Of a DNA stretch of 64,000 nt, positions 4,926-61,335 are shown in pieces. Within the stretch, counting starts at the first letter, position 1; each line of letters opens with the position of its first letter. Where the stretch lies: contig JANJGN010000052.1 in the NCBI GenBank assembly GCA_026770705.1, forward strand, positions 744,001-808,000, written 5' to 3'. The position numbers were made by a program, and so were the translations under genes. The notes under the pieces are model-generated. The model did not search any database and was not told the DNA's origin. It saw nothing but the letters and a program-made list of their open reading frames with translations. This DNA is from Isurus oxyrinchus. Lineage: Eukaryota.

Positions 4926-4983
4926 TTGAGTCTAGTGGATCCACAAACCATCCAGAGTTAAATATTGATATTTCTCTCCCCAG

Positions 4984-34375: not shown

Positions 34376-34719
34376 CACACACACACACGCTCATAAAGAC
34401 AGACACAAACACAGTCACGTGAGGTGAATAGTGTCGATGTATTTAAGGGGAAGCTGGATAAACACACGAGGGAGAAATGAATAGAAGGATATGGTGATGG
34501 GGTGAGATGGAGAAGGGGTGGGCGGAGACTCGTGTGGAGCAGAAACTCCAGCATGGAACAGATGGGCCGAATGGCTCCTTTCCCTGCTGTAAAACGCAGG
34601 TAAAGTTTCAGTTGGAATTAATGAACAGGGCCTGTGTGAAATAGATTGCTAAGCAGTAGATAAGGAGGGGAGAGGCTGTGGCATGGTGCAGGAGGACCTT
34701 GCGTGAATGAGGCCAGGGT

Positions 34720-34836
34720 CTAATATCTACAGCAGAGACCACAAGTCTCATTTGATTCTCTCCAATTACAGCAGTGACAGCAGAATCTGCAGAGCTGCTG
34801 TCTGCTCATTCTGTTCTGGTGCTGCAGCAAGGAGCC
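34720..34836 (-). CDS. hamp: Hepcidin copy L exon 3 (mature 8-Cys peptide)
   Basis: cttttccag|GSLLQHQNRMSRQQLCRFCCHCCNWRESNETCGLCCRY*; hepcidin pattern CxxCCxCC...CGxCC. Confidence 0.92.
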   Translation of the reverse strand, partial: GSLLQHQNRMSRQQLCRFCCHCCNWRESNETCGLCCRY

Positions 34837-37179
34837 CTGGAAAAGCAGGAGCACAATAGGTGAGAACATTCCGGAAAGAAAGAAGGCATCATTTCAATCA
34901 GGCGCGTCATTGGAAGGAGGATGGCGCATTTCTATAGCGCCTTTCCCCTCCTCAGGATGGCCCAAAGTGTTCAACAGCTGAAGGAAGGACTTTTTCTGAA
35001 GTGGGCTCACCGCTGTAATGTAGGAAACGCAGCAGGCAATTCACGCACAGCAAGATCCCACAAACAGAAATGTGATAATGGCCCCGATTTTCAGTTTTTT
35101 ACCAATGTCAGTTGAGGGATAAATGTTTGCCCCAGGAAAGCGGACATAACTCCACCCATCCAGCCCCCACCACCCCCTCCACACATACCCCCCAACTCCT
35201 GACGCACTTCATTTAAATTGTGGCCATGGAATCCTCTATATCCACCTGAGAGGGCAGATTGGTTGCCCCAGTTTAATGTCTCATCTGAAAGACAGCGCCT
35301 TCAACAGTGCAGCACCCCCTCAGTACTGACCCTCCGACTGTGCAGCACTCCCTCAGTACTGACTCTGACAATGCAGCACATCCTCAGTACTGACCCTCCA
35401 ACAGTGCAGCACTCCCTCAAGACTGACCCTCTGACAATGCAACACTCCCTCAGTACTGACCCTCCGACTGTGCATCCCCCCGCCGGTACTGACCCTTCGA
35501 CAGTGCAACACTCCCTCAAGACTGACCCTCTGACAATGCAGCACTCCCTCAGTACTAACCCTCTGACAATGCAGCACTCCCTCAGTACTGACCCTCTGAC
35601 AATGCAGCACACCCTCAATACTGACCCTCCGATAGCTCGGTCATTCCTCAATTACGCCTGGTGGTCCTTTTAACTCAGAGCTGAGAGTCGCAGAGAATCG
35701 AGCAGACACCCTGAACTGACACTTGCAGTGCAAGTACTGGGAGCGCGCTGGTCATTATCATGCTGCTGTCTGTGGGATCTTACTGTGCGCCAATGGCTGA
35801 TTCTTTTCCCACATTACATCAGTGACCTCACATGAAAGAAAAAAGCACTTGATTGTCTGCGAAACACTTTGGGACGTCCTGATGTGTTGGAAGGCGCTAG
35901 AGAAATGCAAGTCCTCTTTGTCTTTCACTCGATCCTCTAAGGTGTCTGTTGATTAACCAGCCTCTCGGTGTTTGATGTAGGCCTGGTTATAAACAGTTAG
36001 AAGGATCAAATATCAAAAATGCTTTGGCTGACAGTCAAACCGATTGTGCATTCGGAGAGATGAGATACGGTCTGCGCACAATGACTCCAGTCTCTGGCAC
36101 TGACTGCCGCCTGGGATCTCCCTTCCACATAACACTCACAACTTGCATTTACACAGCGCCTCTGGCATTGCAAAATGTCCCAGCCCACATTACTGGAGCG
36201 TAAATCAGAGAGAAGTCTAACACTGAGTCACATATGGAGATATTAGGGTTAGGTGACCAAAAGCTTGGTCAAAGATGTCAGTTTTTAAGGAGCGTCTTAA
36301 AGGAGAGAGAGAGAGAGAGGCAGAGAGGTTAAGGGAGGGTATTCCGGAGCTCAGGGCCCCAGGCAGCTGAAGGCACGGCCACCAATGGTGGAGCGATGGG
36401 AATCAGGGGGACCCGGGAGATGCAGTAATGTCAGAGATTTTGGAGGAACATCGGGACCGGAGGAGGTGTTCTCCTGCTCCATATCTCTCTCTCTCTTCCT
36501 CTCTTCCACTCCTCCTCTCCCTGTCTCTCTCTCTCCTACTCTTCCGCTCAATTGCCCTCTCTCCCAATCTTTCTCTCCTCTCTCCCTTTTCCTGTCTCTC
36601 TCCCTCTCTCTCTCCCTGTCTCATTCTCCCACTCTGTATCTCTCCCTCTCTCTCACACTATTTTTGTACCTTTCGCTCACTCTGTAACTCTCCCTTTCCT
36701 GTTAATTTCTCTCTCTTGGACAATCTCTCTTCCCTTTTCACTTTCCCTCACTCTGCATCTCTTCTTTAATTTCTCCCTCTGTCACTCTCTCCCACCTATG
36801 TTCTTTCCCTTTCACCCCTCCCCGTCCCACTCTCTGTCTCTCTCTTCCAATCCCTCCCTCCCTCATTCCATCCCTCTCTCCGACTCTCGACTCCCAGCCT
36901 CTCTTTAACCCACTCCCAGGCTGGATCAGTCTCCCTCTCACTATTCCCGGCGTGGGTTACATTTAAAATTCCTGTGGGGATATGTTCACTTCCTTGGAAT
37001 TGCCTCTTCCCAGCTTTGCAAAAAAGTTGGGCGGGGGCGGGGGGGGGGCTCGATTTCAAACATGCCTCCTGAGTATAACCGAGACAGACTGCCACTGAAA
37101 TCAGCTTGAAATCAGAAAACTTTCTGTGGAAGAAACGAGCAGGGAGAAACCTTAAAATAAGGAATGAATTTCCACCTAC

Positions 37180-37236
37180 CGTGTCCGGGGAATCCACAGA
37201 TTTCTCAATCGTCGAAGAACCTAAAGCAGTGTCAAC
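37180..37236 (-). CDS. hamp: Hepcidin copy L exon 2 (prodomain)
   Basis: tttctttttgcag|VDTALGSSTIEKSVDSPDT|gtaggt, 57 nt, phase 0-0. Confidence 0.8.
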
Positions 37237-37339
37237 CTGCAAAAAGAAAGAATTTATCAGGGAGAAAGTGAGAGGAGGATTGAGGGAGAGGGAGAGAGAG
37301 AGAGAGAGGTACAGGAGATACAGGGGGAGGAGGACAGAC

Positions 37340-37640
37340 TTGCATTTCTCTAACGCCTTTCACCACATCCCAAAGCATTTCACAGCCACTGAAGGATGTT
37401 TTTGAAGTGCACTCACACTGTAGGAAATGTGGCAGCTGATTTGTGCACAGCAAGATCCCACAAATAGCAATGTGATCATGGCCTAGATCATCTGTTTTTG
37501 GTGATGTTGGGTGAGGGATAAATATTGGTCCCAGGACACCGGGGAGAACACCCCCTGCTCTTCCTCCAAATAGTGGCTGTGGGATCTTTCACACCCGCCC
37601 GAGAGGGCAGACGGGGGACTCGGTTTAATGTCTCATTCAA
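37340..37640 (-). mobile_element. Deu-domain-type SINE (similar copies ~9200, 34930-35300, 50600-50860, 60880-61180, 63185-63560)
   Basis: gagacattaaaccgagtcccccgtctgccctctc...aagatcccacagccactatttgga core, recalled as SacSINE1/AmnSINE-like. Confidence 0.65.
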
Positions 37641-39043
37641 CATTGTTGTGCTCCCTCAGTACTAACCCTTTGACACTGCAGCACTCCCTCAGTACTAACC
37701 CTTCGATAGTGCTGCACTCCCACAGTATTGTCCCTCCGTCAGTGCAGCGCTACCTCAGTACTGACCCTCCGACAGTGCAACACTTCCACAGTACTGACCC
37801 TGTAACAATGCAGCACTTCCTCAGTACTGACCTCCGACAGTATAGCACTCACTCAGTACTGTCCCTCCAATAGTGCAACACTTCCACACTACTGACCCTC
37901 TGACAGTCCAGCACTCCCTCAGCACGGAGTGTTGACCGACGTTATGGGACTGAATTCCCTGGAGTGAGACTCAGACCAGAGATTTAGGTAGGGTTGTTCC
38001 GGCTGGAGGAGGTTACAGAGATAGGGAGGGTTGTAGAGGCTGTAGGAGGTAACAGAGATAGGGAGGGTTCTAGAGGCTGTAGGAGGTGACAGAGATAGGG
38101 AAGGTTGTAGGGGCTGTAGGAGGTTACAGAGATAGGGAGGTGAGTAGGGGCTGTAGGAGGTTAAAGAGATGGGGGGGGTTGTGGGGGCTGGAGGAGGTTA
38201 CAGAGGTAGGGAGGGTTGTAGAGGCTGGAGGAGGTTACCAAAATAGATACTGTTGTAGGGGCCATAGTAGGTTACAGAGATAGGGAGAGTTATAGTGTGG
38301 AGAGGACGTTATAGAGTTCATGAGCATTGTAGGGGCTGGAGGAGGTTACAGTGATTCTGAGGGTCGTGGGGCCTGGAGGAGGTTACAGAGATAGGGAGGG
38401 TTGTAGGGCCTGGAGGAGGTTACAGAGATAGGGAGGGTTGTAGGGTCTGGAGCAGGTTACAGAGATAGGGAGGGTTGTAGGGTCTAGAGGAGGTTACAGT
38501 GATCATGAGGGTTGTGGGGCCTGGGGGAGGTTACAGAGATAGGTAGGGTTGTAGGGGCTGGAGGAGGTTACAGAGATAGGGAGGTTTATAGGGGCTGGAG
38601 GAGGTTACAGAGATAGGGAGGGTTGTAGGGGCTGGAGGAGGTTACGGAGATAGGGACAGTTGTAGGGGCTGGAGGAAGTTACAGAGATAGGGATTGTTGT
38701 AGGGGCTGGAGGAGGTTACAGATATAGGGAGGGTTGTAGCGGCTGGAGGAGGTTACAGAGATAGGGAGGGGTGTAGGGGCTGGAGGAGGTTACAGAGATA
38801 GGGAGGGTTGTAAGGCCTGGTGGAGGTTACAGAGATAGGGAGTGGCTGAGGAGGGATTGAAAACAAGAATGAGAATTTCAGGGGAAACGACAGAAGGAAA
38901 TGATGTTAAATTCATAGAGGGCGACAATATTAAAGGCACGAACATAATAATATCAAACTGCGGAAGAGACCAGTCTATCTGGGTGGTAGACGTAGAGTCA
39001 TGTGCAAGAAACACCTCACCCAGAGGGACATCTCTTAGCTTAC

Positions 39044-39136
39044 CCTCGACAAGGAGAAGAAGTGACTCAGCTGCAGGGAGAGCAGCAAAGTCAGAGTGAA
39101 CAAGACAAGTCGCCATTTCATCTGGGAGCTTCCCAT
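39044..39136 (-). CDS. hamp: Hepcidin copy L exon 1 (signal peptide)
   Basis: MGSSQMKWRLVLFTLTLLLSLQLSHFFSLSR|gtaagc, phase 0; TATA upstream. Confidence 0.85.
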
Positions 39137-39199
39137 CTCTGCCTGTCTCTTCTGATCTTCTGGCTCTGCTTTGATGCTTTGGTTTGTAACTAGAGGAGC

Positions 39200-39425
39200 T
39201 TCCTGCTCTTATACCTGAAACACTTGAAGGGGACAGCCGGGGGCGGGTTGCTGTGTGGTATCACACCCATTTCTGGATATTGCAGTGTCGATGTTCCCTG
39301 TCCCACTGGCCTGGGACCAGCAGTAAGGTCACTGGGACATTGACTGTCTGGCACCGAGAACTATCAGTCCCTCCGCAACGCCCTTCACCTTGTGCAGATA
39401 TGTGTTCATATTGACGCAACACAAC
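39200..39425 (-). promoter_or_regulatory. Hepcidin copy L proximal promoter
   Basis: TATAAGAG 39206-39213 (- strand), GC box ~39240, TGACGCAA ~39412. GGTGCC at 39350-39355 where copy R has GGCGCC. Confidence 0.6.
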
Positions 39426-39769
39426 ATAGCAAAAACAGAGGGGCTGGTTCTTATGTCGGCAAATCAGGTGAACCGCATGCCCCCTAACCCCTTACTCCTC
39501 TCATTGCTACACTTACTATTTTACAAATTGTGTGCGTTGCTTTTATTTTGGACAAGGGGCCTCGAGGGGGAACTGATTTACGCTGAGGTTTAGGGGTTAA
39601 CTGTTTACCATGTGGAGACTGTCTGTCACCAGCTTTGTTCATGGTTTATCCAGGAACATTGAAGGGCATGAACGTTCTTGCTTTGTATGGAACAAGTTAC
39701 CAACTGGGTTCAGTCATCGACTCAGACTCACATCAACATAAACTGGCTTCTGACAGGTAAGTTTCTATT

Positions 39770-40380
39770 ACATGAGGGTAGGAGGAGGCCATTTGGCCCC
39801 TCGAGCCTGCTCCACCATTCAATGAGATCATGGCTGATCTGCAAACTAGCCCCATATGGCTTTGTCCCATCTCCTTTAATACCTTTGGATAACAAAAATC
39901 TATCAGTCTCACAGGTTTAAAATGAACAACTTGATCGTGCATCAGTTCCTGTTTGGGGAAGAGAGTTCCAAATTTCTCCCACCCTTTGTACTTCCTAATT
40001 TAATTCCTTTTTAGGCTCTGACCCTGAGTCCCAGACTCCCCCCAACCAGGGGAAATGGTTTCTCTTTATCGCCCCCGATCTGTTCCCCTTATTATCATGC
40101 GAACTTTCATCAAATCTCCTGCTTAACATTCTAACTTCCAGGGAATACAAGCCGAGTTTGTGTTTAATCTCTCCTTGTGATTTAACCCTTGGAGTCCCGG
40201 TCTCATTCTGGTAAACTGACACTGCTCTCCCTCCGAGGTCAATATATCCTTCCTAAGGTGTGGGGCCCAGAATGTCTCACAGTGACTCCAGGTGTGGTCT
40301 AGCCAGGGCTTTATGTAGACTGAAGCATGACCTCTGCCCCCTTATATTCTAATCCGTGAGATAGAAAGGGCAGAGTTCCA
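39770..40380 (-). mobile_element. Degenerate CR1 3' fragment (mirror at 57690-58300)
   Basis: GLEYKGAEVML, LGLYSLE, CR1-type 3' tail. Confidence 0.7.
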
Positions 40381-42999
40381 GAATTGTTGTGTTTATTCGA
40401 CAACAGAATAACAGAGGAAGGTTTCCTCTCTGCCCTCTTCAGCCCCACTGGGAAGGTCAGGATGAGAAGGTTGGGCTGGGTCCCCTGTACTGGACACTCG
40501 CTGAATCTTCCAATGATAGTTCTGGGCTGGATTTCAAAATGCATAGACAAGGATTCAGTGTTCCATCACATTCTGCCTTTGTCTCTTTTCCTCTCGTTCT
40601 CTTTCTCTACCATCCTCTCTCTCTATCTATCTATCTTTCTCCTCATTCTCTCCTGCTTCATCTCTATCACTTTCTTTCTACTTCTTTGTGTGTCTCTGTC
40701 TGTCTCTCTCTCTCTCACTCTTTCTTTCCTTGTCCTTATCTCTTTCAGTGTCTCCCTCTTTCTCTCTCTCTCTCTCTCTCTGTAAATGTGACCCTCTCTA
40801 ACAGTTTGGCCCAGTACTCTTATTTCCCTGTTTTACTGGTGTTCCATTTGAAGGTATACAAGACCAGATCAGACCAGAATGTTTATTTTCCAGTGTTTAC
40901 TGTGTTTTTTTTCATTCTGGGTGTCTCTCGACTCTGTCTGTCCCTCTCTGTCCTTTTATTTCATTCTTTCATGTGATGTGGACATCACTGCCTAGGCCAG
41001 CATTTATTGCCCAACCCTAATTGCCCTTGTTCAGAGGCCACTTTTTAAAAGTGAACCACATTGCTGTGGGTCTGGAGTCACATGTAGGCCAGACCAGGTA
41101 AGGACAGCAGATTTCCCTCCCTAAAGGGCATTTGTGACCCAAATACAAGAATCAGCAATGGTTTCCTGGTCATCATCGGACTTTTAATTCCAGGTTTTTA
41201 TTGAATTGAAATTCCACCAACTGCTGTGGTGAGATTCTAACCAGGGTCCCAGGAGCATTACACTGGGTCTCTGGATTACTGGTCCAGCGAAAATACCATC
41301 AGGCCCCCTCCTCCCCACTCTTCCCTTCCACCATCTTTCACAATCGCTCTCTCTCTCTCTCACTCTCCTTCTCTCTTCCCCCTCTCTCAGTCTCTGTCTG
41401 TCTCTCAATCTCTCTATCGCTCTCTATCTCCTGGAGGCTCTCTCTCTGACTGTCTCCCTCCCTATATCTGTAACCTCCTCTCTCTGTCCCTTTCCTCCAG
41501 CCCCTACAACCCTCCCTATCTCTGTAACCTCCACCTGCCCCTACAATCCTCCCCATCTCTGTAACCTCCTCCACCTCCCACAACCCTCCCTATATCTGTA
41601 ACCTCCTTCACAAGCCCATACAATCCTCCCTATCCCTGTAACAACCTCCAGCCCGACAACACCCCTATACATGTCACCTCCTCTAGCCACTGTAACCCTA
41701 ATAATCTCCCAAGCCTCCACCAGCCTTGACAATCCTGCCCATCTCTGTAACATCCTCCAACCACCACAACCCTCCCTATTTCTGTAATCTCTTCCAGTCC
41801 CTACAACCCTCCCTATCTCTACAACCTGCTCCACCCCCTGCAACTCGCCCTATCTCTGTGTCATCCTCCAGCCCCTACAACCCTCCCTATACCTGTAACC
41901 TCCTCCAGCCCCTACAACCCTCCCTATCTCTGGAACAGCTTCCAGCACTTACAACCCTCCCTATCTCTGTAACCTCCTCCAGCCCCTACAACACTCCTTA
42001 TCTCTGTAACCTCCTCCAGCCCCTACAACCCTCCCTATCTCTGTAACCTCCTCCAGCCCCTGTAACCCTCCCCATCTCTTGAAGGGTTCTCAAAATTTCC
42101 AACTGTCAAGGAACCCTGGGTTGGTGAGCATGACCCCTGACCTCTCCTAGTGCAATTTAGTTAGGGTTTGGGGGTGGGACAAGGGTAAGGGCATTAGTAG
42201 CGTGATTCTCCCTCGTTATGCCGTGTGTTCCCCATTCTTAACTCAGTGTACTTTGTAAGTCTGTATAATCTCAGTGTCATCCTAATGTTATAAGTTCATT
42301 TGTGACTTCAGTAAACTCAGTTTTTGTCTTGCACCAAAACCAGTTGTCTGCTGCACTTTGTGACAAGCCCCGAATAAGTCCAAGGTCTAGAACCCAGGGA
42401 TTGGGAGTGATTCAGACGGCTCAGAAGTCGCAGGTGAAGCTGACACACACCACCACACCCTACAAGGGGCTGAATGGCCTCCTCCTGTTCCTGTATAACG
42501 GACATAAGTGGCAGAATGGCCTCCTCCTGTTTCTGTGTAACAGTCTTGAGGGGGCTGAATGGCCTCCTCCTGTTCCTGTGTAACAGTCTCGAGGGGGCTG
42601 AATGGGCCTCTTCTGGTTCCTGTGTAACAGGCTCGAGGGGACTGAATGGCCTCCTCCTGTTCCTGTGTAACAGGCTTGAGGGGGCTGAATGGCCTCCTCC
42701 TGTTCCTGTGTAACAGGCTCGACGGGCTGAATGGCCTCCTTCTGCACTGTAAACTTGTTGTGATACTGTAACTGCCTCTTTGGTTTCATTCAGCTGAATC
42801 TTCAGCTCTTCAGTCTCTTCCTTGTATCTCTTGCCTTCCTCCTGGAACATTGGACATGGTTGGGTCTTCCCTGCCAACTGTTTCTTCAGTTTGCTCAGAG
42901 CGGCACAGAATTCGCTTTCTTTCTCTTCAGGATTTTCCAGTGGAACCAACTCTGACCTGAGGGACACTTGCAGCCTGTGAGGATGCTTCAATTCTTCAA

Positions 43000-44125
43000 A
43001 CTCATTCCGAGATACACTCTCATATTCCCCCAGCAACTCAGCAACTCCTCCAGTGAAACATTTCAGAGCAGCTGAGCTTGGTTTTCTGGAACCAGTCTCG
43101 GCCCAGAAGACTAGGGCCGTCACCTGTCGCTATGATCACTGGAAGCTGGGCTGTCTGCTGCCTGTAGGACACAGGTACTGGGATGAGGTCCTTTCCCTGT
43201 ATGGATTCTCCAGCGTGTGTCTTCAGCTGATCCATTGTTGGCTCTAAATTCAGCGTCTGGGTTCCTTCATTTAGCTGTTTAAATGTGGGCTCTTCCACCA
43301 CTGTGTCTGAGGCTCCCGTATCTGCCCCATTACTAGTGGCTGCCCATTCACTTGGGTTGTGATGGTTATAGGTTCAGTTTTTACCACTGTGACATTGGAC
43401 AGGGAATAGACATCGGTATCAGCAGCTTCAGGCTCTGTGATATTATTCACTTCCATCATGTTGGTGCACTGCCTGATGGGCTGTCTCGATTTCACCCTGC
43501 ATTGCTTTATTACCCACCCCTTTCTTGTGGCAGTGATGGCATTCTGCCCCCTTGAACCTGCAGGTGTCCGGTACGAGCTCACTCCCCCCCACATCGAGAA
43601 CAGGCCAACTTCGGAGTTGCTGCTGAAATACTCCCACGAAGCCTTTTAGTTTCTGGAGCGGCAGAGACTGTCTCTCGCTTGGCGGCTGTCTCTCTCTCTC
43701 TCCCTCTCTCTCTCTCCAGTTTGAGCCTCACGCCCGGTGGTTGGTTCCTGTCCCAGCTGAGGACTGGCGCCATGTTGTACATCCTGTAAATCCCGCCAGT
43801 CTCTCCCAGCACTTTCCATGCCTGGCGCTATTTCCATGGTGCGCTTCAAATCGATGTCGGCTTCTGCGAGTAAACGGCTCTGAATGGCGTTGGGGTGAAC
43901 GACACAAACCAATCGGCCCCGCAACATGTCATTGAGTGTGTCTCCGAGGTCCCAGTGCTCAGTCACCTGCTTCCACTTCACTGTATAGGTTGCGATGGAC
44001 TCTCCCGGGGCCCTTACTCTGGAGTTAAACTTAAACCTCTGCATTATTACCCACGGCTTCAGCTGAAAATACATCTTCATGAGGACGACTAATTGGTGAA
44101 AAGATTTAGAATTGGGTGTAATACC
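43000..44125 (-). mobile_element. Gypsy gag-protease fragment (left arm)
   Basis: KSFHQLV.LMK.YF.LKP.VI.QRFKFN.R, MLRGRLVC..AIQSRLLAE, CCHC knuckles, DTGAS. Confidence 0.85.
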
Positions 44126-44407
44126 CGTCACTGTCTTCAGCTCTGAGATTGTCAATCCCCACCGAACAATTCTTCCCTTCCAAGTCGCCGATTATTTTAG
44201 CACGTCCCACGAATGTGGCCACCCCATAATTGGGATCTTTGGTGTATGTGATGGTATATTTCCATCTATACCAATATTTATACCAAGCTCCGTGCAGTGC
44301 TGTGTAAGAGTGGGAAGGAAAGTCAAAGCTACACGGAATAACCACACAAGAGCTGCTGATGGCCCTCCGAGGCAGCGCCTTCATAGACCATCCCTCTGAC
44401 GTCACTC
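44120..44407 (-). pseudogene. Gene C (left copy) V-set exon truncated in strand F
   Basis: GVTSEGWSM...SSCVVIPCSFDFP...LHGAWY...GRAKIIGDL..KNCSVGIDNLRAEDSD, then runs into Gypsy gag and a stop. Confidence 0.85.
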
Positions 44408-45226
44408 CTGAAAGGCAACAAGGGAAGAGACAGGACATCAAAAAGCAGAATATTACTTCAATGGAGAGAGTCTACAGAATGCGGTACAGAGGGATCTGGG
44501 TGTCCATGTACATGAATCACAGAAAGTCAGCATTCAGGAACAGCACGGAATGAGGAAGGCAAGTGGAATGTTGGCCTTTATTGCAAAGGGATGGGGTATA
44601 AAAGGAGGGGAGTCTTGCTACAACTGTACAGGGCGTTGGTGAGATTGTATCAGGAGCAGTGTGTACAGTTCTGGTCTCCTTACTTAGGGAGGGATAGACT
44701 CTGCATTGGAGGCAGTTCAGAGGAGGTTCACTGGGCTGATTCCTGGGATGAAGGGGGTTTGTCTTATGAGGAAATGTTGAGCAGGTTGGCCCTGTATCCA
44801 TTGGAGTTTAGAAGAATGAGAGGTGATCTTATTGAAACATATAAGATTCTGAGGTGGTGGGGGGTTTGACAGGGTGCATGCTGAGGGGATGTTACCCCTT
44901 GTGGGGGAATCCTGTGAAGCAATAAGGATGTTTTACTGCATTAAAGGTGCTATATAAATGCACTGTCATTCCTATTGAAACAAGCTCTCTGATGCACAAA
45001 CAGAAAATGCTGGAAAAACTCAGCAGGTCTGACAGCATCTGTGGAGAGAGAAACAGAGTTGGTGTTTCGAGTCCGTATGAGACTTTTTCTTTTGCTAAAT
45101 TCTCTGACTCGCTAATCACTCACTCTCTGTGTGATCACTAACCCTGTTCTCTAAAATTAAATGTTCACTTCCTCACTCCAGGAAAGAATCCAATTCCCTG
45201 AGTGCCGATCAGTAATGAATTTGTAC

Positions 45227-45272
45227 CTTGCAGCAAGCTGATGAAGATCAGTATCAGACCGACCTCTCCCAT
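45227..45272 (-). pseudogene. MAG/Siglec-like gene C (left copy) leader exon
   Basis: MGEVGLILIFISLLQ-g|gtacaa, 46 nt, phase 1. Confidence 0.8.
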
Positions 45273-47064
45273 CTTCAGTTCCTCATCTAAATGGAAAATG
45301 ATAAAGACAGAGACTTTTTCAGAAATTGTCCCCAGTGTTTCTTCCTCAAACAACAACAACTTGTGTTTAAATGGCACCTTTCAGGGAATTAAACAGCCCC
45401 AGGGAATTATCTAATGTCAAGACAAAGAAGGAGAGATTGAGAAGGGACATCGCAAACCGATTCACCAAACACGGCAAAAATTCATTGTTCCCTCACTCCC
45501 TGTTCTGGGTGTCCAGCTTTTTCTCTCAGTGAGTTTAGTCCTCACAATCTCTATCTATCGCACTCTTCTGCTCTATCTCTCTCTCTCACACACACATTCT
45601 CTCTCTAACACTCACAATCTGTCTCTATCACACTCTTCTGCTCTATCTCTCGTTCACTCACACACACACATTCTCTCTCTAACACTCACAATCTCTCTCT
45701 ATCACACTCTTCTGCTCTATCTCTCTCTCTCACACACAGACACGTTCTCTCTCTAACACTCACAATGTCTCTCTATCGCACTCTTCTGCTCTATCTCTCT
45801 CTCTCTCTCACACACACATTCTCGCTCTTATACTCACAAAATTTTTCTCTATCACACTCTTCTGCTCTATCTCTCTCTCACACACACACACATTCTCTCT
45901 AACAATCACAATCCCTCTCTATCGCACTCTGCTTTCTCCCTCTCTCTCTCTCTCACACACACATTCTCTCTGTCAGCACTCACAATCTCTCTCTATAGCA
46001 CTCTTCTGCTCTATCTCTCTCTCTCTCTCACACACACACATTCTCTCTCTAACACTCACAATCTCTCTCTATCACACTCTTCTGCTCTATCTATCTCTCT
46101 CTCTCACACACACATTCTCTCTCTCAGACACACACATTCTTTCTCTCTCAAACATTTAACATTTATCTTCATCTCGCTCTTCTGCTGTCTCCCTCTTTCT
46201 CTCCCTCGCACACACACACACTCTCTGTCACAAACACACGCTCTCTCCCACACACTCTCTCTCACACACTCTCACATGCACACTCTCTCCCTCATATACA
46301 TATACTCTCTGTATCTGATGTCTGAATGCATTTCCAGGTAACTTCCCTCAGGATAACGTCTTATGCCACATTTTTAATGGACACTGCCTATGTAAACTGT
46401 CACACTGCAGTTGCATTCTCCCACCAGTAGAGGTGTTGTCCATCTAGAATGAAAGAAGCTTGCTTTCACATCCTCAGGATTTCGCAAAGGGCTGGACAGG
46501 CAATGAATTGTATTTGATTGATGGAGCACTGAGGGGTAAATCTACAATTCTCTGTTCAGGAGGTTGCTCATCCAATTCAGGGTCTTGTTGATCTGGAGTT
46601 TACCTTCTTTCAACACAGAATCGGAGCTGATACCAAGACTCCAGTGCGGCACTGAGAGAGGAGAGGGAACTCACGTGTCTGTATGTTTGTGTTTGTGTTT
46701 CTGCAGATGTGAGTGTGTTTGTGTGGGTATGCACACATGTGTCTGTGTGTGCGCATGCGCATGTGTCTGTGTGTCTAGGTCTGTCCATGAGTGAGAGTAT
46801 GTGCATGTGTGTGTCTATGTGTGGGCATGAATGTGTGTGTGTGTTTGAGATGGGTGTGTATTTTCCTGTGTATATGCTTGTATGTGTATGACTGTGTGTG
46901 GATAATTATGCATGTGTGNNNNNNNNNNNNNNNNNNNNNNNNNNNNNNNNNNNNNNNNNNNNNNNNNNNNNNNNNNNNNNNNNNNNNNNNNNNNNNNNNN
47001 NNNNNNNNNNNNNNNNNNNNNNNNNNNNNNNNNNNNNNNNNNNNNNNNNNNNNNNNTAACTCAC

Positions 47065-49094: not shown

Positions 49095-49132
<38 letters not shown>

Positions 49133-51869: not shown

Positions 51870-52945
51870 TGTGAGAGAGAGAGAGAGAGCAGAAGAGTGC
51901 GATAGAGAGAGATTGTGAGTGTCAGAGAGAGAATGTGTGTGTGTGTGAGAGAGAGATAGAGCAGACAGTGTGATAGAGAAAGATTGTGAATGTTAGAGAG
52001 ACAATGTGTGTGAGAGAGAGAGAGAGACAGAGCAGAAGAGTGCGATAGAGAGAGATTGTGAGTGTTAGAGAGAGAATGTGAGTGTGAGAGAGAGAGATTG
52101 TGAGTGCTGACAGAGAGAATGTGTGTGTGAGAGCGAGAGAGAGCAGAAGAGTGCGATAGAGAGAGATTGTGTTTGTTAGAGAGAGAATGTGTGTGTGTGT
52201 AAGAGAGAGATAGAGCAGAGGAGTGTGATAGAGAGAGATTGTGAGTGTTAGAGAGAGAATGTGTGTTTGTGAGAGAGAGAGAGCAGAAGAGTGCGATAGA
52301 GAGAGATTGTGAGTGTTAGAGAGAGAAGGTGTGTGTGAGAGAGAGAGAGAGCAGAAGAGTGCGATAGAGAGAGATTGTGAGTGTTAGAGAGAGAATATGT
52401 GTGTGTGAGAGAGATAGAGCAGAAGAGTGCGATAGAGAGAGATTGTGAGTGTTAGAGAGAGAATGTGTGAGAGAGAGAGAGAGAGAGAGCAGTAGAGTGT
52501 GATAGAGAGAGATTGTGAGTGTTAGAGAGAGAATGTGTGAGAGAGAGAGAGAGAGAGCAGTAGAGTGTGATAGAGAGAGATTGTGAGTGTTAGAGAGAGA
52601 ATGTGTGTGTGTGTGAGAGAGAGATAGAGCAGAAGAGTGTGATAGAGAGAGATTGTGAGTGTTAGAGAGAGAATGTGTGTGTGAGAGAGAGAGTTAGAGC
52701 AGAAGAGTGTGATAGAGAGAGATTGTGAGTGTTAGAGAGAGAATGTGTGTGTGAGAGAGAGAGTTAGAGCAGAAGAGTGTGATAGAGAGAGATTGTGAGT
52801 GTTAGAGAGAGAATGTGTGTGTGTGAGAGAGAGAGAGAGATAGAGCAGAAGAGTGCGATAGAGAGAGATTGTGAGTGTTAGAGAGAGAATGTGTGTGTGA
52901 GAGAGAGAGATAGAGCAGAAGAGTGCGATAGATAGATATTGTGAG
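51870..52945 (+). repeat. GA/GT compound satellite (~62-66 bp unit); shorter mirror at 45540-46140
   Basis: gagcagaagagtg(c/t)gatagagagagattgtgagtgttagagagagaatgtgtg repeated. Confidence 0.9.
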
Positions 52946-53209
52946 GACTAAACTCACTGAGAGAAAAATCTGGACACCCAGCAGAGGGAGTGAGGGAACA
53001 ATGAATTTTTGCCGTGTTTGGTGAATCGGTTTGCGATGTCCCTTCTCAATCTCTCCTTCCTTGTCTTGACATTAGTTTATTCGCTGGGGCTGTTTAACTG
53101 ACTGAAAGGTGCCATTTAACCACAAGTTGTTGTTTGAGGAAGAAACGCTGGGGACAATTTATGAAAAAGTCTCTGTCTTTATCATTTCCATTTAGATGAG
53201 GAACTGAAG

Positions 53210-53255
53210 ATGGGAGAGGTCGGTCTGATATTGATCTTCATCAGCTTGCTGCAAG
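53210..53255 (+). pseudogene. MAG/Siglec-like gene C (right copy) leader exon
   Basis: MGEVGLILIFISLLQ-g|gtacaa; acceptor tttag at 53191-53195. Confidence 0.8.
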
Positions 53256-53569
53256 GTACAAATTCATTACTGATCGGAACTCAGGGAATTGGATTCTTTC
53301 CTGGAGTGAGGAAGTGAACATTTAATTTTAGAGAACAGGGTTAGTGATCACACAGAGAGTGAGTGAATAGCGAGTCAGAGAATATAGCAAAAGAAAAAGC
53401 CTCATATGGACTCGAAACACCAACTCTGTTTCTCTCTCCACAGATGCTGTCAGACCTGCTGAGTTTTTCCAGCATTTTCTGTTTGTGCATCAGAGAGCTT
53501 GTTTCAATAGGAATGACAGTGCATTTATACAGCACCTTTAATGCAGTAAAACATCCTTATTGCTTCACA

Positions 53570-54050
53570 GGATTCCCCCACAAGGGGTAACATCCCATCA
53601 GCATCCACCCTGTCAAACCCCCCACCACCTCAGAATCTTATATGTTTCAATAAGATCACCTCTCATTCTTCTAAACTCCAATGGATACAGGGCCCAACCT
53701 GCTCAACATTTCCTCATAAGACAAACCCCCTTCATCCCAGGAATCAGCCCAGTGATCCTCCTCTGAGCTGCCTCCAATGCAGAGTCTATCCCTCCCTAAG
53801 TAAGGAGACCAGAACTGTACACACTGCTCCTGATATAATCTCACCAACGCCCTGTACAGTTGTAGCAAGACTCCCCTCCTTTTATACTCCATCCCTTTGC
53901 AATAAAGGCCAACATTCCACTTGCCTTCCTCATTCCGTGCTGTTCCTGAATGCTGACTTTCTGTGATTCATGTACAAGGACACCCAGATCCCTCTGTACC
54001 GCATTCTGCTGCCTCTCTCCATTGAAGTAATATTCTGCTTTTTGATGTCC
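53570..54050 (-). mobile_element. CR1 fragment in gene C leader-V intron (mirror 44435-44910)
   Basis: LLQLYRALVR...CVQFWSPYL. Confidence 0.85.
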
Positions 54051-54075
54051 TGTCCCTTCCCTTGTTGCCTTTCAG

Positions 54076-54363
54076 GAGTGACGTCAGAGGGATGGTCTAT
54101 GAAGGCGCTGCCTCGGAGGGCCATCAGCAGCTCTTGTGTGGTTATTCCGTGTAGCTTTGACTTTCCTTCCCACTCTTACACAGCACTGCACGGAGCTTGG
54201 TATAAATATTGGTATAGATGGAAATATACCACCACATACACCAAAGATCCCAATTATGGGGTGGCCACATTCGTGGGACGTGCTAAAATAATCGGCGACT
54301 TGGAAGGGAAGAATTGTTTGGTGAGGATTGACAGTCTCAGAGCTGAAGACAGTGACGGGTATT
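54076..54363 (+). pseudogene. Gene C (right copy) V-set exon truncated in strand F
   Basis: ctttcag acceptor, phase 1; same Gypsy junction as left copy. Confidence 0.85.
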
Positions 54364-55490
54364 ACACCCAATTCTAAATCTTTTCACCAATTAGTCGTCC
54401 TCATGAAGATGTATTTTCAGCTGAAGCCGTGGGTAATAATGCAGAGGTTTAAGTTTAACTCCAGAGTAAGGGCCCAGGGAGAGTTCATCGCAACCTATAC
54501 AGTGAAGTGGAAGCAGGTGACTGAGCACTGGGACCTCGGAGACACACTCAATGACATGTTGCGGGGCCGATTGGTTTGTGTCGTTCACCCCAACGCCATT
54601 CAGAGCCGTTTACTCGCAGAAGCCGACATCGATTTGAAGCGCACCATGGAAATAGCGCCAGGCATGGAAAGTGCTGGGAGAGACTGGCGGGATTTACAGG
54701 ATGTACAACATGGCGCCAGTCCTCAGCTGGGACAGGAACCAACCACCGGGCGTGAGGCTCAAACTGGAGAGAGAGAGAGGGAGAGAGAGAGAGACAGCCG
54801 CCAAGCGAGAGACAGTCTCTGCCGCTCCAGAAACTAAAAGGCTTCGTGGGAGTATTTCAGCAGCAACTCCGAAGTTGGCCTGTTCTCGATGTGGGGGGGA
54901 GTGAGCTCGTACCGGACACCTGCAGGTTCAAGGGGGCAGAATGCCATCACTGCCACAAGAAAGGGGTGGGTAATAAAGCAATGCAGGGTGAAATCGAGAC
55001 AGCCCATCAGGCAGTGCACCAACATGATGGAAGTGAATAATATCACAGAGCCTGAAGCTGCTGATACCGATGTCTATTCCCTGTCCAATGTCACAGTGGT
55101 AAAAACTGAACCTATAACCATCACAACCCAAGTGAATGGGCAGCCACTAGTAATGGGGCAGATACGGGAGCCTCAGACACAGTGGTGGAAGAGCCCACAT
55201 TTAAACAGCTAAATGAAGGAACCCAGACGCTGAATTTAGAGCCAACAATGGATCAGCTGAAGACACACACTGGAGAATCCATACAGGGAAAGGACCTCAT
55301 CCCAGTACCTGTGTCCTACAGGCAGCAGACAGCCCAGCTTCCAGTGATCATAGCGACAGGTGAGGGCCCTAGTCTTCTGGGCCGAGACTGGTTCCAGAAA
55401 ACCAAGCTCAGCTGCTCTGAAATGTTTCACTGGAGGAGTTGCTGAGTTGCTGGGGGAATATGAGAGTGTATCTCGGGAATGAGTTTGAAG
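54360..55490 (+). mobile_element. Gypsy gag-protease fragment (right arm)
   Basis: Same as left arm; DTGASDTV at 55161; SLLGRDW. Confidence 0.85.
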
Positions 55491-55499
55491 AATTGAAGC

Positions 55500-55730
55500 A
55501 TCCTCACAGGCTGCAAGTGTCCCTCAGGTCAGAGTTGGTTCCACTGGAAAATCCTGAAGAGAAAGAAAGCGAATTCTGTGCCGCTCTGAGCAAACTGAAG
55601 AAACAGTTGGCAGGGAAGACCCAACCATGTCCAATGTTCCAGGAGGAAGGCAAGAGATACAAGGAAGAGACTGAAGAGCTGAAGATTCAGCTGAATGAAA
55701 CCAAAGAGGCAGTTACAGTATCACAACAAT
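55500..55730 (+). pseudogene. Coiled-coil host-gene fragment, UACA/RAI14/ANKRD24-family-like (mirror 42755-42985)
   Basis: HRLQVSLRSELVPLENPEEKESEFCAALSKLKKQLAGKTQ...QEEGKRYKEETEELK; gapless resemblance to the UACA coiled coil as I recall it. Confidence 0.45.
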
Positions 55731-58679
55731 TTTACAGAGCAGAAGGAGGCCATTCAGCCCGTCGAGCCTGTTACACAGGAACAGGAAGAGGCCCATTCAG
55801 CCCCCTCGAGACTGTTACACAGGAACAGAAGGGGGCCATTCAGCCCATTGAGCCTATTACACAGATACAGGAAGAGGCCATTCAGCCCCCTCAAGACTGT
55901 TACACAGGAACAGGAGCAAGCCCATTCAGCCACTGATGTCTGTTACACAGGAACAGGAGGAGGCCCATTTAGCTCCTCAAGCCTGTTACACAGGAACTGG
56001 AGGAGGCCCATTCAGCCCCATTGAGCCTGTTACACAGAAAAAGGACGAGGCCCATTCAGCCACTGATGCCCGTTACACAGGAACAGGAGGAGGCCATTCA
56101 GCCCCTTGTAGGGTGTGGTGGTGTGTGTCAGCTTCACCTGCGACTTCTGAGCCGTCTGAATCACTCCCACTCCCTGGGTTCTAGACCTTGGACTTATTCG
56201 GGGCTTGTCACAAAGTGCAGCAGACAACTGGTTTTGGGCCTTCATGGGCCCAGCCTCCTGTCTGCAGGGTTTTCCACTTAACTCAGCAGTTTAAAGGTGC
56301 AAAAGTGATATCCTTGTTGATGATATGGAAAATGTGGGAATTTTGAGAACCCTTCAAGAGATAGGGAGGGTTACAGGGTTACAGGGGCTGGAGGAGGTTA
56401 CAGATATAGGGAGGGGTGTAGGGGTTGAAGGTGGTTACAGAGATGGGGAGGGTTGTGGGGGTTGGAGGTGGTTACAGATATAGGGAGGGGTGTAGGGGTT
56501 GAAGGTGGTTACAGAGATGGGGAGGATTGTAGAGGCAGGTGGAGGCTGCCTTAGGGAGGGTTGTAGGGGCTGGAGGAAAGGGACAGAGAGAGGAGGTTAC
56601 AGATATAGGGAGGGAGACAGTCAGAGAGAGAGCGACAGGGAGAGAGAGAGCGATAGAGAGATTGAGAGACAGACAGAGACTGAGAGAGGGAGAAGAGAGC
56701 AGGAGAGTGAGAGAGAGACAGAACAAGTGTGAAAGATGGTGGAAGGGAAGAGTGGGGAGGTGTTGGCCTGATGGTATTTTCACTGGACCAGTAATCCAGA
56801 GACCCAGTGTAATGCTCCTGGGACCCTGGTTAGAATCCCACCACAGCAGTTGGTGGAATTTGAACTCAATAAAAACCTGGAATTAAAAGTCCGATGATGA
56901 CCAGGAAACCATTGCCGATTCTTGTATTTGGGTCACAAATGCCCTTTAGGGAGGGAAATCTGCTGTCCTTACCTGGTCTGGCCTACATGTGACTCCAGAC
57001 CCACAGCAATGTGGTTCACTTTTAAAAAGTGGCCTCTGAACAAGGGCAATTAGGGTTGGGCAATAAATGCTGGCCTGGTCAGTGATGTCCACATCACATG
57101 AAAGAATGAAATAAAAGGACAGAGAGGGACAGACAGAGTCGAGAGACACCCAGAATGAAAAAAACACAGTAAACACTGGAAAATAAACATTCTGGTCTGA
57201 TCTGGTCTTGTATACCTTCAAATGGAACACCAGTAAAACAGGGAAATAAGAGTACTGGGCCAAACTGTTAGAGAGGGTCACATTTAGAGAGAGAGAGAGA
57301 GAGAGAAAGAGGGAGACACTGAAAGAGATAAGGACAAGGAAAGAAAGAGTGAGAGAGAGAGACAGACAGAGACACACAAAGAAGTAGAAAGAAAGTGATA
57401 GAGATGAAGCAAGAGAGAATGAGGAGAAAGATAGATAGATAGAGAGAGAGGATGGTAGAGAAAGAGAACGAGAGGAAAAGAGACAAAGGCAGAATGTGAT
57501 GGAACACTGAATCCTTGTCTATGCGTTTTGAAATCCAGCCCAGAACTATCATTGGAAGATTCAGCGAGTGTCCAGTACAGGGGACCCAGCCCAACCTTCT
57601 CATCCTGACCTTCCCAGTGGGGCTGAAGAGGGCAGAGAGGAAACCTTCCTCTGTTATTCTGTTGTCGAATAAACACAACAATTCTGGAACTCTGCCCTTT
57701 CTATCTCACGGATTAGAATATAAGGGGGCAGAGGTCATGCTTCAGTCTACATAAAGCCCTGGCTAGACCACACCTGGAGTCACTGTGAGACATTCTGGGC
57801 CCCACACCTTAGGTAGGATATATTGACCTCGGAGGGAGAGCAGTGTCAGTTTACCAGAATGAGACCGGGACTCCAAGGGTTAAATCACAAGGAGAGATTA
57901 AACACAAACTCGGCTTGTATTCCCTGGAAGTTAGAATGTTAAGCAGGAGATTTGATGAAAGTTCGCATGATATTAAGGGGAACAGATCGGGGGCGATAAA
58001 GAGAAACCATTTCCCCTGGTTGGGGGGAGTCTGGGACTCGGGGTCAGAGCCTAAAAAGGAATTAAATTAGGAAGTACAAAGGGTGGGAGAAATTTGGAAC
58101 TCTCTTCCCCAAACAGGAACTGATGCACGATCAAGTTGTTCATTTTAAACCTGTGAGACTGATAGATTTTTGTTATCCAAAGGTATTAAAGGAGATGGGA
58201 CAAAGGCATATGGGGCTAGTTTGCAGATCAGCCATGAACTCTTTGAATGGTGGAGCAGGCTCGAGGGGCCAAATGGCCTCCTCCTACCCTTATGTAATAG
58301 AAACTTACCTGTCAGAAGCCAGTTTATGTTGATGTGAGTCTGAGTCGATGACTGAACCCAGTTGGTAACTTGTTCCATACAAAGCAAGAACGTTCATGCC
58401 CTTCAATGTTCCTGGATAAACCATTAACAAAGCTGCTGACAGACAGTCTCCACATGGTAAACACTGACCGATCAACACATGACATGGCTGTTAACCCCGA
58501 AACCTCAGCGTAAATCAGTTCCCCCTCGAGGCCCCTTGTCCGAAATAAAAGCAACGCACACAATTTGTAAAATAGTAAGTGTCTGGCAGGAAGGAGGAGC
58601 AATGAGAGGAGTAAGGGGTTAGGGGGCGTGCGCTTCACCTGATTTGCCGACATAAGAACCAGCCCCTATGTTTTTGCTA

Positions 58680-58905
58680 TGTTGTGTTGCATCAGTATGA
58701 ACACATATTTGCACAAGGTGAAGGGCGTTGCGGAGGGACTGATAGTTCTCGGCGCCAGACAGTCAATGTCCCAGTGACCTTACTGCTGGTCCCAGGCCAG
58801 TGGGACAGGGAACATCGACACTGCAATATCCAGAAATGGGTGTGATACCACACAGCTACCCACCCGCGGCTGTCCCCTTCAAGTGTTTCAGGTATAAGAG
58901 CAGGA
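58680..58905 (+). promoter_or_regulatory. Hepcidin copy R proximal promoter
   Basis: TATAAGAG 58893-58900; GGCGCCAGAC 58751-58760 (BMP-RE-like GGCGCC overlapping SMAD CAGAC); TTGCACAA 58709 (C/EBP-like); TTGCATCA ~58687. Confidence 0.6.
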
Positions 58906-58969
58906 AGCTCCTCTAGTTACAAACCAAAGCATCAAAGCAGAGCCAGAAGATCAGAAGAGACAGGCAGAG

Positions 58970-59062
58970 ATGGGAAGCTCCCAGATGAAATGGCGACTTG
59001 TCTTGTTCACTCTGACTTTGCTGCTCTCCCTGCAGCTGAGTCACTTCTTCTCCTTGTCGAGG
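58970..59062 (+). CDS. hamp: Hepcidin copy R exon 1 (donor GT mutated to TT)
   Basis: Coding sequence identical to copy L exon 1, but followed by ttaagc instead of gtaagc. Confidence 0.8.
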
Positions 59063-61278: not shown

Positions 61279-61335
61279 GTTGACACTGCTTTAGGTTCTT
61301 CGACGATTGAGAAATCTGTGGATTCCCCGGACACG
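61279..61335 (+). CDS. hamp: Hepcidin copy R exon 2
   Basis: Identical to copy L exon 2; AG/GT intact. Confidence 0.8.

What the first reader, a model, noticed from the sequence alone, without database searches (positions are those of the whole stretch)
34720..34836. Atypical mature hepcidin: no ferroportin-binding N-terminus, doubled loop, N-glycosylation sequon
Seen: the six residues before Cys1 are MSRQQL. The Cys5-Cys6 loop is 8 aa (NWRESNET) with an N-E-T sequon. The positional convertase site is HQNR (no P4 Arg), with an alternative RMSR three residues later. Known: human DTHFPI and fish QSHLSL N-termini drive ferroportin binding, and the human loop is 4 aa (HRSK). Inference: an antimicrobial or neofunctionalised hepcidin, analogous to teleost HAMP2 but probably of separate origin, possibly glycosylated.
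Basis: partly seen in the sequence, partly recalled or inferred. Interest (0 to 1): 0.8.

Follow-up and report, generated by a model that had tools for sequence, protein, structure and literature searches.

The report
Long-loop hepcidin gene copy
This is the last exon of an intact-looking gene for a hepcidin-type peptide with an unusually long loop and no standard iron-hormone start; it has a broken mirror-image twin nearby, and a defence role rather than iron control is inferred, not tested.

Summary
Window 34836-34720 (minus strand) is a 38-codon terminal exon behind a good splice acceptor. It has eight cysteines in hepcidin order and scores above Pfam's Hepcidin cut-off on its own (29 vs 27 bits). 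MSRQQL before Cys1, the 8-residue loop NWRESNET with an N-E-T sequon, HQNR and RMSR are all there.

It completes a three-exon model of 88 codons by arithmetic (TATA box, signal-peptide exon, 19-codon exon 2).

The gene lies in one arm of an inverted duplication beside Siglec-like Ig exons. The twin copy (exon 3 at 63646-63762) has lost two cysteines and its exon-1 splice donor (GT to TT).

Exons 1 and 2 are identical between the copies. Exon 3 differs at 9 of 117 bases, 8 of them amino-acid changing, against 56 of 3354 in surrounding unique DNA (p 0.0003). So the mature peptide diverges much faster than its surroundings, as in defence peptides.

Best reading: a diverged, probably defence-type hepcidin paralogue, most likely cut after RMSR. 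Expression, glycosylation, ferroportin activity and other cartilaginous-fish hepcidins could not be tested. The scan has noted this gene family many times elsewhere in this genome.

The parts
39208..39213 (-). TATA box (TATAAG), 77 nt upstream of the ATG of copy A
39044..39136 (-). Copy A exon 1 coding part, 31 codons, MGSSQMKWRLVLFTLTLLLSLQLSHFFSLSR. This is a signal peptide (basic start, 12-residue hydrophobic core). Donor AGG|GTAAGC, phase 0.
   Evidence: Sequence model only, no RNA evidence.
37180..37236 (-). Copy A exon 2 (model), 19 codons, VDTALGSSTIEKSVDSPDT. Acceptor ctttctttttgcAG, donor ACG|GTAGGT, phase 0 at both ends.
   Evidence: It was the top of 5 candidates in my splice and open-frame scan, read. 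101 of 101 bases around it are identical in copy B. There is no Pfam signal for this 21-residue stretch and no RNA evidence.
34720..34836 (-). Copy A exon 3, coding part: 38 codons plus stop. It holds the end of the propeptide and the eight-cysteine hepcidin domain. This is the finding.
34810..34821 (-). HQNR, at the position of the usual RX(K/R)R convertase site but without Arg at P4 or a basic residue at P2
   Evidence: Read. The motif definition comes from PMC3325200.
34801..34812 (-). RMSR, a minimal R-X-X-R convertase motif. Cutting after it would leave a 26-residue peptide starting QQL, with 3 residues before Cys1.
   Evidence: Read. The 26-mer has net charge +1 and the 29-mer +2. That cleavage happens here is inference.
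34744..34767 (-). Cys5-Cys6 loop NWRESNET (8 residues). The N-E-T sequon is at 34744-34752.
58970..59064 (+). Copy B exon 1. Its coding part is identical to copy A, but the donor is TT instead of GT (59063-59064). The GT one base upstream would shift the frame into a TAG in exon 2.
   Evidence: alignment column 759; 172 of 172 identical; ATG position
61279..61335 (+). Copy B exon 2, identical to copy A
63646..63762 (+). Copy B exon 3: GSLLQRQNRMSRQRHCRFGCHCCNWRESNETRGICCIF. Cys2 has become Gly and Cys6 has become Arg. Pfam Hepcidin scores 20 bits, below the cut-off of 27.
34482..46097 (.). Left arm of the inverted duplication. Its outer end coincides with the end of the window in the partner arm, so the true limit is unknown.
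52407..64000 (.). Right arm of the inverted duplication
44109..44441 (-). Siglec-like V-set exon inside the left arm, duplicated together with the hepcidin gene (partner at 53970-54374)
   Evidence: Pfam V-set E 6.4e-4 and Ig_CD22 E 3.1e-3, both below their cut-offs. The partner ORF gave no family at E 0.01.

Best explanation
Window 34836-34720 (minus strand) is the mature-peptide exon of an intact-looking three-exon hepcidin-family gene. The parts are a TATA box, a signal-peptide exon at 39136-39044, a pro-region exon at 37236-37180, and this exon.

Inferred path: the roughly 88-residue precursor enters the secretory pathway and loses its signal peptide. A proprotein convertase then cuts it, most likely after RMSR, the only R-X-X-R motif. 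HQNR lacks the basic P4 and P2 residues. The product would be a 26-residue, four-disulfide peptide with only three residues (QQL) before Cys1 and a hairpin loop of 8 instead of 4-5 residues.

It lacks the RX(K/R)R site and the His3 N-terminus of iron-hormone hepcidins. Its mature exon is also the fastest-diverging part of a locally duplicated gene. I therefore read it as a diverged, lineage-specific, defence-type or otherwise re-purposed hepcidin paralogue, not the ferroportin-regulating hormone.

Shown: family membership, the sequence features, the gene model at sequence level, the duplication, and the exon-3-specific divergence. Inferred: splicing and expression of this copy, the cleavage site, the disulfide fold, loss of ferroportin action, and any defence activity.
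For: - Pfam Hepcidin scores above its cut-off for exon 3 alone.
- The eight-Cys pattern is unique in the window, with 0 hits in 200 simulations.
- The model has canonical splice sites, phase 0 throughout, a signal peptide and a TATA box. The layout matches the one described for HAMP genes: signal peptide in exon 1, prodomain in exon 2, mature peptide in exon 3 (PMC3325200, passages read).
- Siglec-like V-set and CD22-like Ig exons lie in the window. In mammals HAMP lies in a locus with USF2, and MAG and USF2 lie near FFAR2 on human chromosome 19 (PMC4453067, passages read).
- A versus B: 0 of 93 (exon 1 coding part), 0 of 79 (5'UTR and TATA) and 0 of 57 (exon 2) bases differ. 9 of 117 differ in exon 3, 8 of them non-synonymous. 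Unique non-array DNA differs at 56 of 3354 (Fisher p 2.7e-4). Against all of intron 2 (65 of 2262) p is 0.007.
- There is no RX(K/R)R site and no His at position 3.
- The hepcidin N-terminus is necessary and sufficient for ferroportin binding (PMC6316648, passage read).
- Sea bass Hamp1, but not Hamp2, regulates ferroportin (PMC5665920; title and abstract start seen, one methods passage).
- Net charge is +1 or +2. My hand count of the sea bass Hamp2 peptide printed gives +2.
Against: - There is no RNA evidence for this copy.
- No AATAAA or ATTAAA lies within 1 kb after the stop. The nearest candidates are AATACA at 277 nt and AATAAA at 1020 nt.
- The A/B comparison has no outgroup. The excess changes may all lie in the broken copy B, or may come from patchy gene conversion from a third copy. 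It does not prove selection on copy A.
- Two of the six pre-Cys1 residues and the CRF core match sea bass Hamp1, so ferroportin binding is not excluded.
- The AlphaFold single-sequence model (pLDDT 76) is two helices, not a beta-hairpin.
- No other cartilaginous-fish hepcidin could be retrieved. That it is a diverged paralogue beside a standard gene rests on earlier unchecked notes of this scan.
- Copy A lacks the GGCGCC element that copy B has at -219. This could mean different regulation or decay.
Confidence: 0.55

Rival explanations
1. It is the animal's working iron hormone. Cartilaginous-fish hepcidins simply look like this, and their ferroportin has co-adapted.
For: - S2, L6 and CR[F/W]CC are shared with sea bass Hamp1.
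- The position beside Siglec-like genes is the ancestral HAMP neighbourhood.
- I found no standard hepcidin in this window. tblastn found only the two copies.
- I could fetch no chondrichthyan comparator.
Against: - The RX(K/R)R site is lost and there is no His3.
- The mature exon changes several times faster than neighbouring DNA between recent copies, unlike HAMP1 and mammalian HAMP, where no positive selection was found (PMC3325200).
- Earlier notes of this scan say the same animal expresses a standard-looking hepcidin. I did not check this.
Confidence: 0.12
2. Copy A is a silent or decaying duplicate. It looks intact only because the duplication is recent.
For: - Its twin is already broken: donor GT to TT and two Cys lost.
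- There is no canonical poly(A) signal within 1 kb.
- GGTGCC stands in place of the twin's GGCGCC.
- The pS of 0.048 against pN of 0.086 gives no sign of purifying selection between the copies.
- There are no RNA data.
Against: - All eight Cys, all four splice sites, the ATG, the TATA box and the open frame are intact. Only copy A scores above the Pfam cut-off.
- Neutral decay cannot produce an exon-3 divergence 4.6 times that of the flanking DNA.
Confidence: 0.2
3. The clustered exon-3 differences come from non-allelic gene conversion with other family members, not from selection. Either a short patch was pasted into one copy, or everything except exon 3 was homogenised.
For: - Divergence along the arms is very uneven: 0 differences per 100 bases over long tracts around exons 1 and 2, introns included, against 2-3% elsewhere.
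- Earlier notes report many copies, and another copy with the same TT donor. I did not check this.
Against: - The 9 differences lie inside the coding part of the exon, and its immediate flanks have 5 of 244.
- 8 of the 9 differences change the amino acid.
- This rival changes the cause of the pattern, not what the gene is.
Confidence: 0.3

Closest known systems
Teleost HAMP2-type hepcidin (e.g. sea bass Hamp2, HSSPGGCRFCCNCCPNMSGCGVCCRF as printed in PMC5665920; bass hepcidin PDB 1s6w)
   Same: - Eight Cys in the same order, with an identical CRFCC and a CCR[F/Y] end.
- 4 of 7 non-Cys, non-loop core residues are identical (my count).
- The N-terminus is unlike the iron-hormone type.
- Net charge is low (+2 against +1 or +2).
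- There is a sequon in the Cys5-Cys6 loop.
- It belongs to a duplicated gene whose mature region evolves fast (PMC3325200; here).
   Different: - The loop is 8 residues, not 5. HMMER needs a 3-residue gap.
- There is no RX(K/R)R site.
- It lies in a Siglec-like cluster of a different vertebrate lineage, so it is probably an independent duplication.
- No activity has been tested.
- The sequences are too short for a phylogeny, and I had no set to build one.
Iron-hormone hepcidin (human hepcidin-25, PDB 1m4f/2kef/6wbv; teleost Hamp1 QSHLSLCRWCCNCCRGNKGCGFCCKF as printed in PMC5665920)
   Same: - Pfam family, eight Cys and three-exon layout.
- Neighbourhood with Siglec/MAG-type genes.
- S2, L6 and R8 are shared with sea bass Hamp1.
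   Different: - The loop is 8 residues against 4 (human) or 5 (bass).
- There is no His3 and no aromatic or Leu at position 4.
- HQNR stands in place of RX(K/R)R.
- The likely cut after RMSR would leave only 3 residues before Cys1, whereas the first 7-9 residues carry ferroportin binding (PMC6316648).

Membership tests
Hepcidin (Pfam PF06446) | Profile score at or above the curated cut-off | tested here: met
   Exon 3 alone scores 29 bits against a cut-off of 27, E 1.3e-6. Copy B scores 20 bits, below the cut-off.
Hepcidin (Pfam PF06446) | Eight cysteines arranged C-x2-CC-x-CC-loop-C-x2-CC | tested here: met
   CRFCCHCCNWRESNETCGLCC. The loop is 8 residues against 4-5 in the references.
Hepcidin (Pfam PF06446) | Three exons: signal peptide, prodomain, then end of prodomain plus mature peptide | tested here: met
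   Met at sequence level only. The layout is as described in PMC3325200.
Hepcidin (Pfam PF06446) | RX(K/R)R convertase motif directly before the mature peptide | tested here: not met
   HQNR stands at that position. Only a minimal RXXR (RMSR) follows three residues later.
Hepcidin (Pfam PF06446) | Beta-hairpin fold held by four disulfides | tested here: inconclusive
   AlphaFold2 without an alignment gave two helices at pLDDT 76. Single-sequence models of small disulfide peptides are unreliable, and I could run no control.
Iron-hormone hepcidin (HAMP / teleost HAMP1 type) | Conserved N-terminal ferroportin-binding segment with His at position 3 | tested here: not met
   The segment is MSRQQL, or QQL if cut after RMSR. 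2 of 6 residues are identical to sea bass Hamp1.
Iron-hormone hepcidin (HAMP / teleost HAMP1 type) | Causes ferroportin internalisation; liver expression induced by iron or inflammation | not testable with these tools
   This needs peptide assays and RNA data. On the promoter I saw only that copy A has no GGCGCC and that neither copy has TTCNNNGAA within about 620 nt.
Iron-hormone hepcidin (HAMP / teleost HAMP1 type) | Conserved neighbourhood (USF2 - HAMP - MAG/CD22 in mammals) | tested here: inconclusive
   V-set plus Ig_CD22 domains are present in the window. I did not look for USF2. The order of the mammalian locus is partly recalled, partly from PMC4453067.
Defence-type hepcidin (works like teleost HAMP2) | Coexists with a separate iron-type hepcidin in the same genome | not tested
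   Earlier notes of this scan say so. The window holds only the two long-loop copies.
Defence-type hepcidin (works like teleost HAMP2) | Fast, mostly amino-acid-changing divergence confined to the mature peptide | tested here: met
   9 of 117 bases differ in exon 3 (8 non-synonymous), 0 of 150 in the coding parts of exons 1-2, and 56 of 3354 in unique flanking DNA, p 2.7e-4. This is one pair of copies with no outgroup.
Defence-type hepcidin (works like teleost HAMP2) | Antimicrobial activity of the mature peptide | not testable with these tools
Net charge is +1 or +2.

The most novel reading that the evidence does not exclude
The long-loop peptides are a lineage-specific family of secreted, N-glycosylated hepcidin derivatives. 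They diversify under selection and are amplified in the same duplication units as Siglec-like receptor exons. The enlarged loop would present a (sialylated) glycan, so the peptide would act as a soluble ligand or decoy for the neighbouring Siglec-like receptors, or as a glycan-cloaked defence peptide, rather than as an iron hormone.
Probability: 0.06. Interest if true: 0.8.

Novelty: new variant of a known kind. Interest (0 to 1): 0.5.

Why it matters
Hepcidin is the master iron hormone of vertebrates. In some teleosts duplicated copies split into an iron-type and a defence-type gene. A second, independent split in cartilaginous fishes would show that this division of labour arose repeatedly. 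Here it would come with a structural novelty (an 8-residue hairpin loop and a displaced processing site) and a fast-evolving mature exon inside a Siglec-like receptor cluster. It would also give a natural test of which hepcidin parts ferroportin binding really needs.

I found no paper on cartilaginous-fish hepcidins. The searches gave no paper on the subject in title or abstract, and the peptide words gave 0 papers. The word-based protein searches found no relative in 5.8 billion clusters.

Tried and rejected
Protein searches
- With the exon-3 frame at two query lengths (candidate windows 27-86 and 31-99 residues), no candidate shared three 5-residue words.
- With the out-of-frame 108-residue ORF over exon 1, tried as a handle on paralogous contigs, 1 candidate came up and none scored E 0.001 or better.
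- The phmmer search of 1.84 billion representatives with the 38 residues gave 3 hits at E 0.001 or better. All 3 are long (664-1442 residues), multi-stretch cysteine-rich proteins, not hepcidins.
- A degenerate DNA pattern for CRFCCHCCNW found 0 metagenome contigs.
- The PDB sequence search found only weak hits: 1s6w at E 0.64 and 1m4f at E 4.9. These serve as alignments, not as evidence of membership.

Structure
- AlphaFold on the single sequence gave a helical model that I do not trust. I did not run a fold search on it.

Sequencing runs
- 8 of the 10 listed runs hold part of the stretch, and none is on record as RNA.

Splice model
- My scan was restricted to phase 0/0 exons of 30-150 nt. 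4 other candidates had poor donors and were rejected.

Readings I rejected
- A chance cysteine-rich ORF, because of Pfam and the simulations.
- An assembly artefact as the cause of the twin. The arms differ by about 1.7-5%, and the differences include the donor and two cysteines.

Promoter motif scans used short consensus strings only and carry little weight.

Supplements are closed. The nurse-shark plasma proteome paper (PMC9207270, passage read) lists a hepcidin with no whale-shark orthologue. Its sequence, if given, would be in files I could not see, and it would be the best available comparator.

I did not establish the taxon myself.

Full report
WHAT IS THERE. On the minus strand, window 34836..34720 reads GSLLQHQNRMSRQQLCRFCCHCCNWRESNETCGLCCRY followed by TAG. 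It is directly preceded by a pyrimidine tract and AG (ctcctgcttttccAG). This exon alone scores 29 bits (E 1.3e-6) against Pfam Hepcidin, above the curated cut-off of 27. The cysteine pattern occurs once in the six-frame translation of the window and in 0 of 200 Markov simulations. HMMER alignments to solved hepcidins need a 4-residue gap against human hepcidin (loop HRSK) and a 3-residue gap against bass hepcidin. The sea bass Hamp1 and Hamp2 peptides printed in PMC5665920 have 5-residue loops.

GENE MODEL. Upstream on the same strand I find the following:
- TATAAG at 39213-39208.
- An ATG in good context at 39136.
- A 31-codon exon, MGSSQMKWRLVLFTLTLLLSLQLSHFFSLSR, ending in AGG|GTAAGC at 39044.
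- A 19-codon exon at 37236-37180, VDTALGSSTIEKSVDSPDT, with acceptor ctttctttttgcAG and donor ACG|GTAGGT.

Exon 2 was the best of 5 candidates in a scan for phase-0/phase-0 open exons with splice signals. All junctions are phase 0, and 31 + 19 + 38 gives 88 codons. This matches the layout described for HAMP genes in PMC3325200 (passages read). The splicing is therefore a sequence model, not an observation. A caveat on the 3' end: no AATAAA or ATTAAA lies within 1 kb of the stop. The nearest candidates are AATACA at 277 nt and AATAAA at 1020 nt.

SETTING. The gene sits in the left arm (34482 to about 46100) of an inverted duplication whose right arm runs from about 52400 to 64000. The outer limit coincides with the window end, so it is unknown. 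Each arm also carries a Siglec-like V-set exon. The rest of the window holds V-set, CD22-like first Ig and C2-type exons. In mammals HAMP lies in a locus with USF2 and FFAR genes, and MAG and USF2 lie near FFAR2 on human chromosome 19 (PMC4453067). The neighbourhood therefore fits a true HAMP locus that has been locally amplified.

THE TWIN COPY AND WHAT IT TEACHES.
- Copy B (plus strand; ATG 58970, exon 2 at 61279-61335, exon 3 at 63646-63762) is identical to copy A over 172 of 172 bases of 5'UTR plus exon 1 and over 101 of 101 bases around exon 2.
- Its exon-1 donor is TT instead of GT. Using the GT one base upstream would run into a TAG in exon 2.
- Its exon 3 differs at 9 of 117 bases. Eight change the amino acid (H6R, Q14R, L15H, C19G, C32R, L34I, R37I, Y38F) and one is silent.
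- Two cysteines are lost, and they are not partners in either published disulfide map. Pfam drops to 20 bits.
- In unique, non-array DNA of the same arms the two copies differ at 56 of 3354 aligned bases (1.7%).
- Exon 3 is thus 4.6 times more diverged (Fisher p 2.7e-4). Against all of intron 2, arrays included (65 of 2262), p is 0.007.
- Nei-Gojobori gives pN 0.086 and pS 0.048.

Plain decay of a dead copy cannot exceed the local neutral rate. So either amino-acid change has been favoured in the mature peptide, or a short patch was exchanged with a third family member. In both cases the signal and pro parts are held constant while the mature peptide varies. PMC3325200 reports positive selection in the mature region for teleost HAMP2 but not for HAMP1 or mammalian HAMP. 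Without an outgroup I cannot say how many of the nine changes happened in copy A.

HOW IT PROBABLY WORKS. The precursor has a classic signal peptide. The RX(K/R)R motif, found in almost all fish hepcidins (PMC3325200), is absent, since HQNR has neither P4 Arg nor a basic P2. RMSR is the only R-X-X-R motif, so I consider cleavage after it the likelier event. That yields a 26-residue peptide starting QQL (net charge +1, pI 7.7). Cleavage after HQNR would give the 29-mer (net +2).

The hepcidin N-terminus is necessary and sufficient for ferroportin binding, and 7-9-residue N-terminal minihepcidins are active (PMC6316648). Here that segment is either truncated to three residues or reads MSRQQL. 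It has no His3 and shares only 2 of 6 residues with sea bass Hamp1. Together with the fast-changing mature exon, this makes a ferroportin-hormone role unlikely but not excluded. The core is closer to sea bass Hamp2 (CRFCC, CCR[F/Y]; 4 of 7 non-Cys core positions against 2 of 7 for Hamp1, my hand count). Its charge is like Hamp2's +2.

The sequon is weak evidence for glycosylation. It is shared by the two recent copies only, it lies ten residues from the C-terminus, and bass Hamp2 and 1s6w carry N-M-S in the same loop. From memory, native bass hepcidin was isolated unglycosylated. I checked no paper on that.

WHAT I COULD NOT DO.
Expression and splicing of this copy are therefore untested. I kept that stretch out of all later searches and masked it in scripts.
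- No run that holds the exon is on record as RNA.
- All three word-based protein searches, the 1.84-billion-representative phmmer search, a metagenome pattern scan and the Atlas gave no hepcidin relative. I have no other cartilaginous-fish hepcidin and no phylogeny.
- AlphaFold on the single sequence gave a two-helix model (pLDDT 76). This is not the hepcidin hairpin. I regard it as uninformative for a small disulfide peptide without an alignment, but it counts as a result against rather than for.

LITERATURE AND EARLIER NOTES.
- Searches for hepcidin with shark, cartilaginous fish, elasmobranch and chondrichthy* returned 208, 1392 (3 of 4 terms), 16 and 12 papers. None of the listed ones was about a cartilaginous-fish hepcidin.
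- The nurse-shark plasma proteome paper only lists hepcidin among proteins without a whale-shark orthologue (PMC9207270).
- Four peptide words of this exon occur in 0 papers.
- This scan's own index holds 179 notes with the word hepcidin for this genome. Follow-up notes on other pieces call the long-loop gene multi-copy and very strongly transcribed, and say it is accompanied by a standard-looking hepcidin expressed in the same animal. These are unchecked AI notes. I used them as leads and tested only what lies in this window: the gene span, copy B's six cysteines, the donor lesion, the GGCGCC difference and the inverted duplication.
- So the scan has found this family before on other DNA of the same genome.

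VERDICT. The thing is a genuine hepcidin-family gene copy of an unusual long-loop type. Its functional claims (antimicrobial, non-ferroportin, glycosylated) remain untested.

Noticed in passing
window 58970-59064, 63646-63762: The twin hepcidin copy has a TT in place of the exon-1 GT donor and has lost Cys2 and Cys6. Its 5'UTR, exon 1 and exon 2 are still base-for-base identical to copy A.
   Followed up: yes
window about 39355 (copy A, minus strand) and about 58751 (copy B): 219 nt upstream of the ATG, copy B has GGCGCC directly followed by AGAC, a BMP-response-like element. Copy A has GGTGCC. At -283 copy A reads TGACGCAA and copy B TGATGCAA. Neither copy has TTCNNNGAA within about 620 nt.
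   Followed up: partly
window 33922-34385; 35304-35632 and 37651-37922; 37985-38842: Tandem arrays lie around and inside the gene: 64-nt units x7.2 just 3' of the gene, 33-nt units x10 and x8.3 in the two introns, and 37-nt units x23 in intron 1. They inflate the apparent divergence of the duplication arms.
   Followed up: partly
window 1330-1818, 4965-5444, 8524-8994: There are three tandem, closely similar V-set exons of Siglec/CD22 type. For the first, Pfam gives V-set E 9.5e-11 and Ig_CD22 E 1.2e-7. One reads YFFTIKF where the other two read YFFRIEF, so the usual sialic-acid-binding arginine may be missing in one.
   Followed up: partly
window 34443-34719: No canonical poly(A) signal follows the stop of copy A for 1 kb. 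The 3' flank runs into what looks like a dispersed repeat, with similar pieces at 50633-50717 and 9287-9353.
   Followed up: no
window 46100-52400: The spacer between the two arms holds Ig C2/I-set-like exons and two of the three N runs of the window (46919-47056, 47832-47962). The centre of the palindrome is therefore not fully assembled.
   Followed up: no
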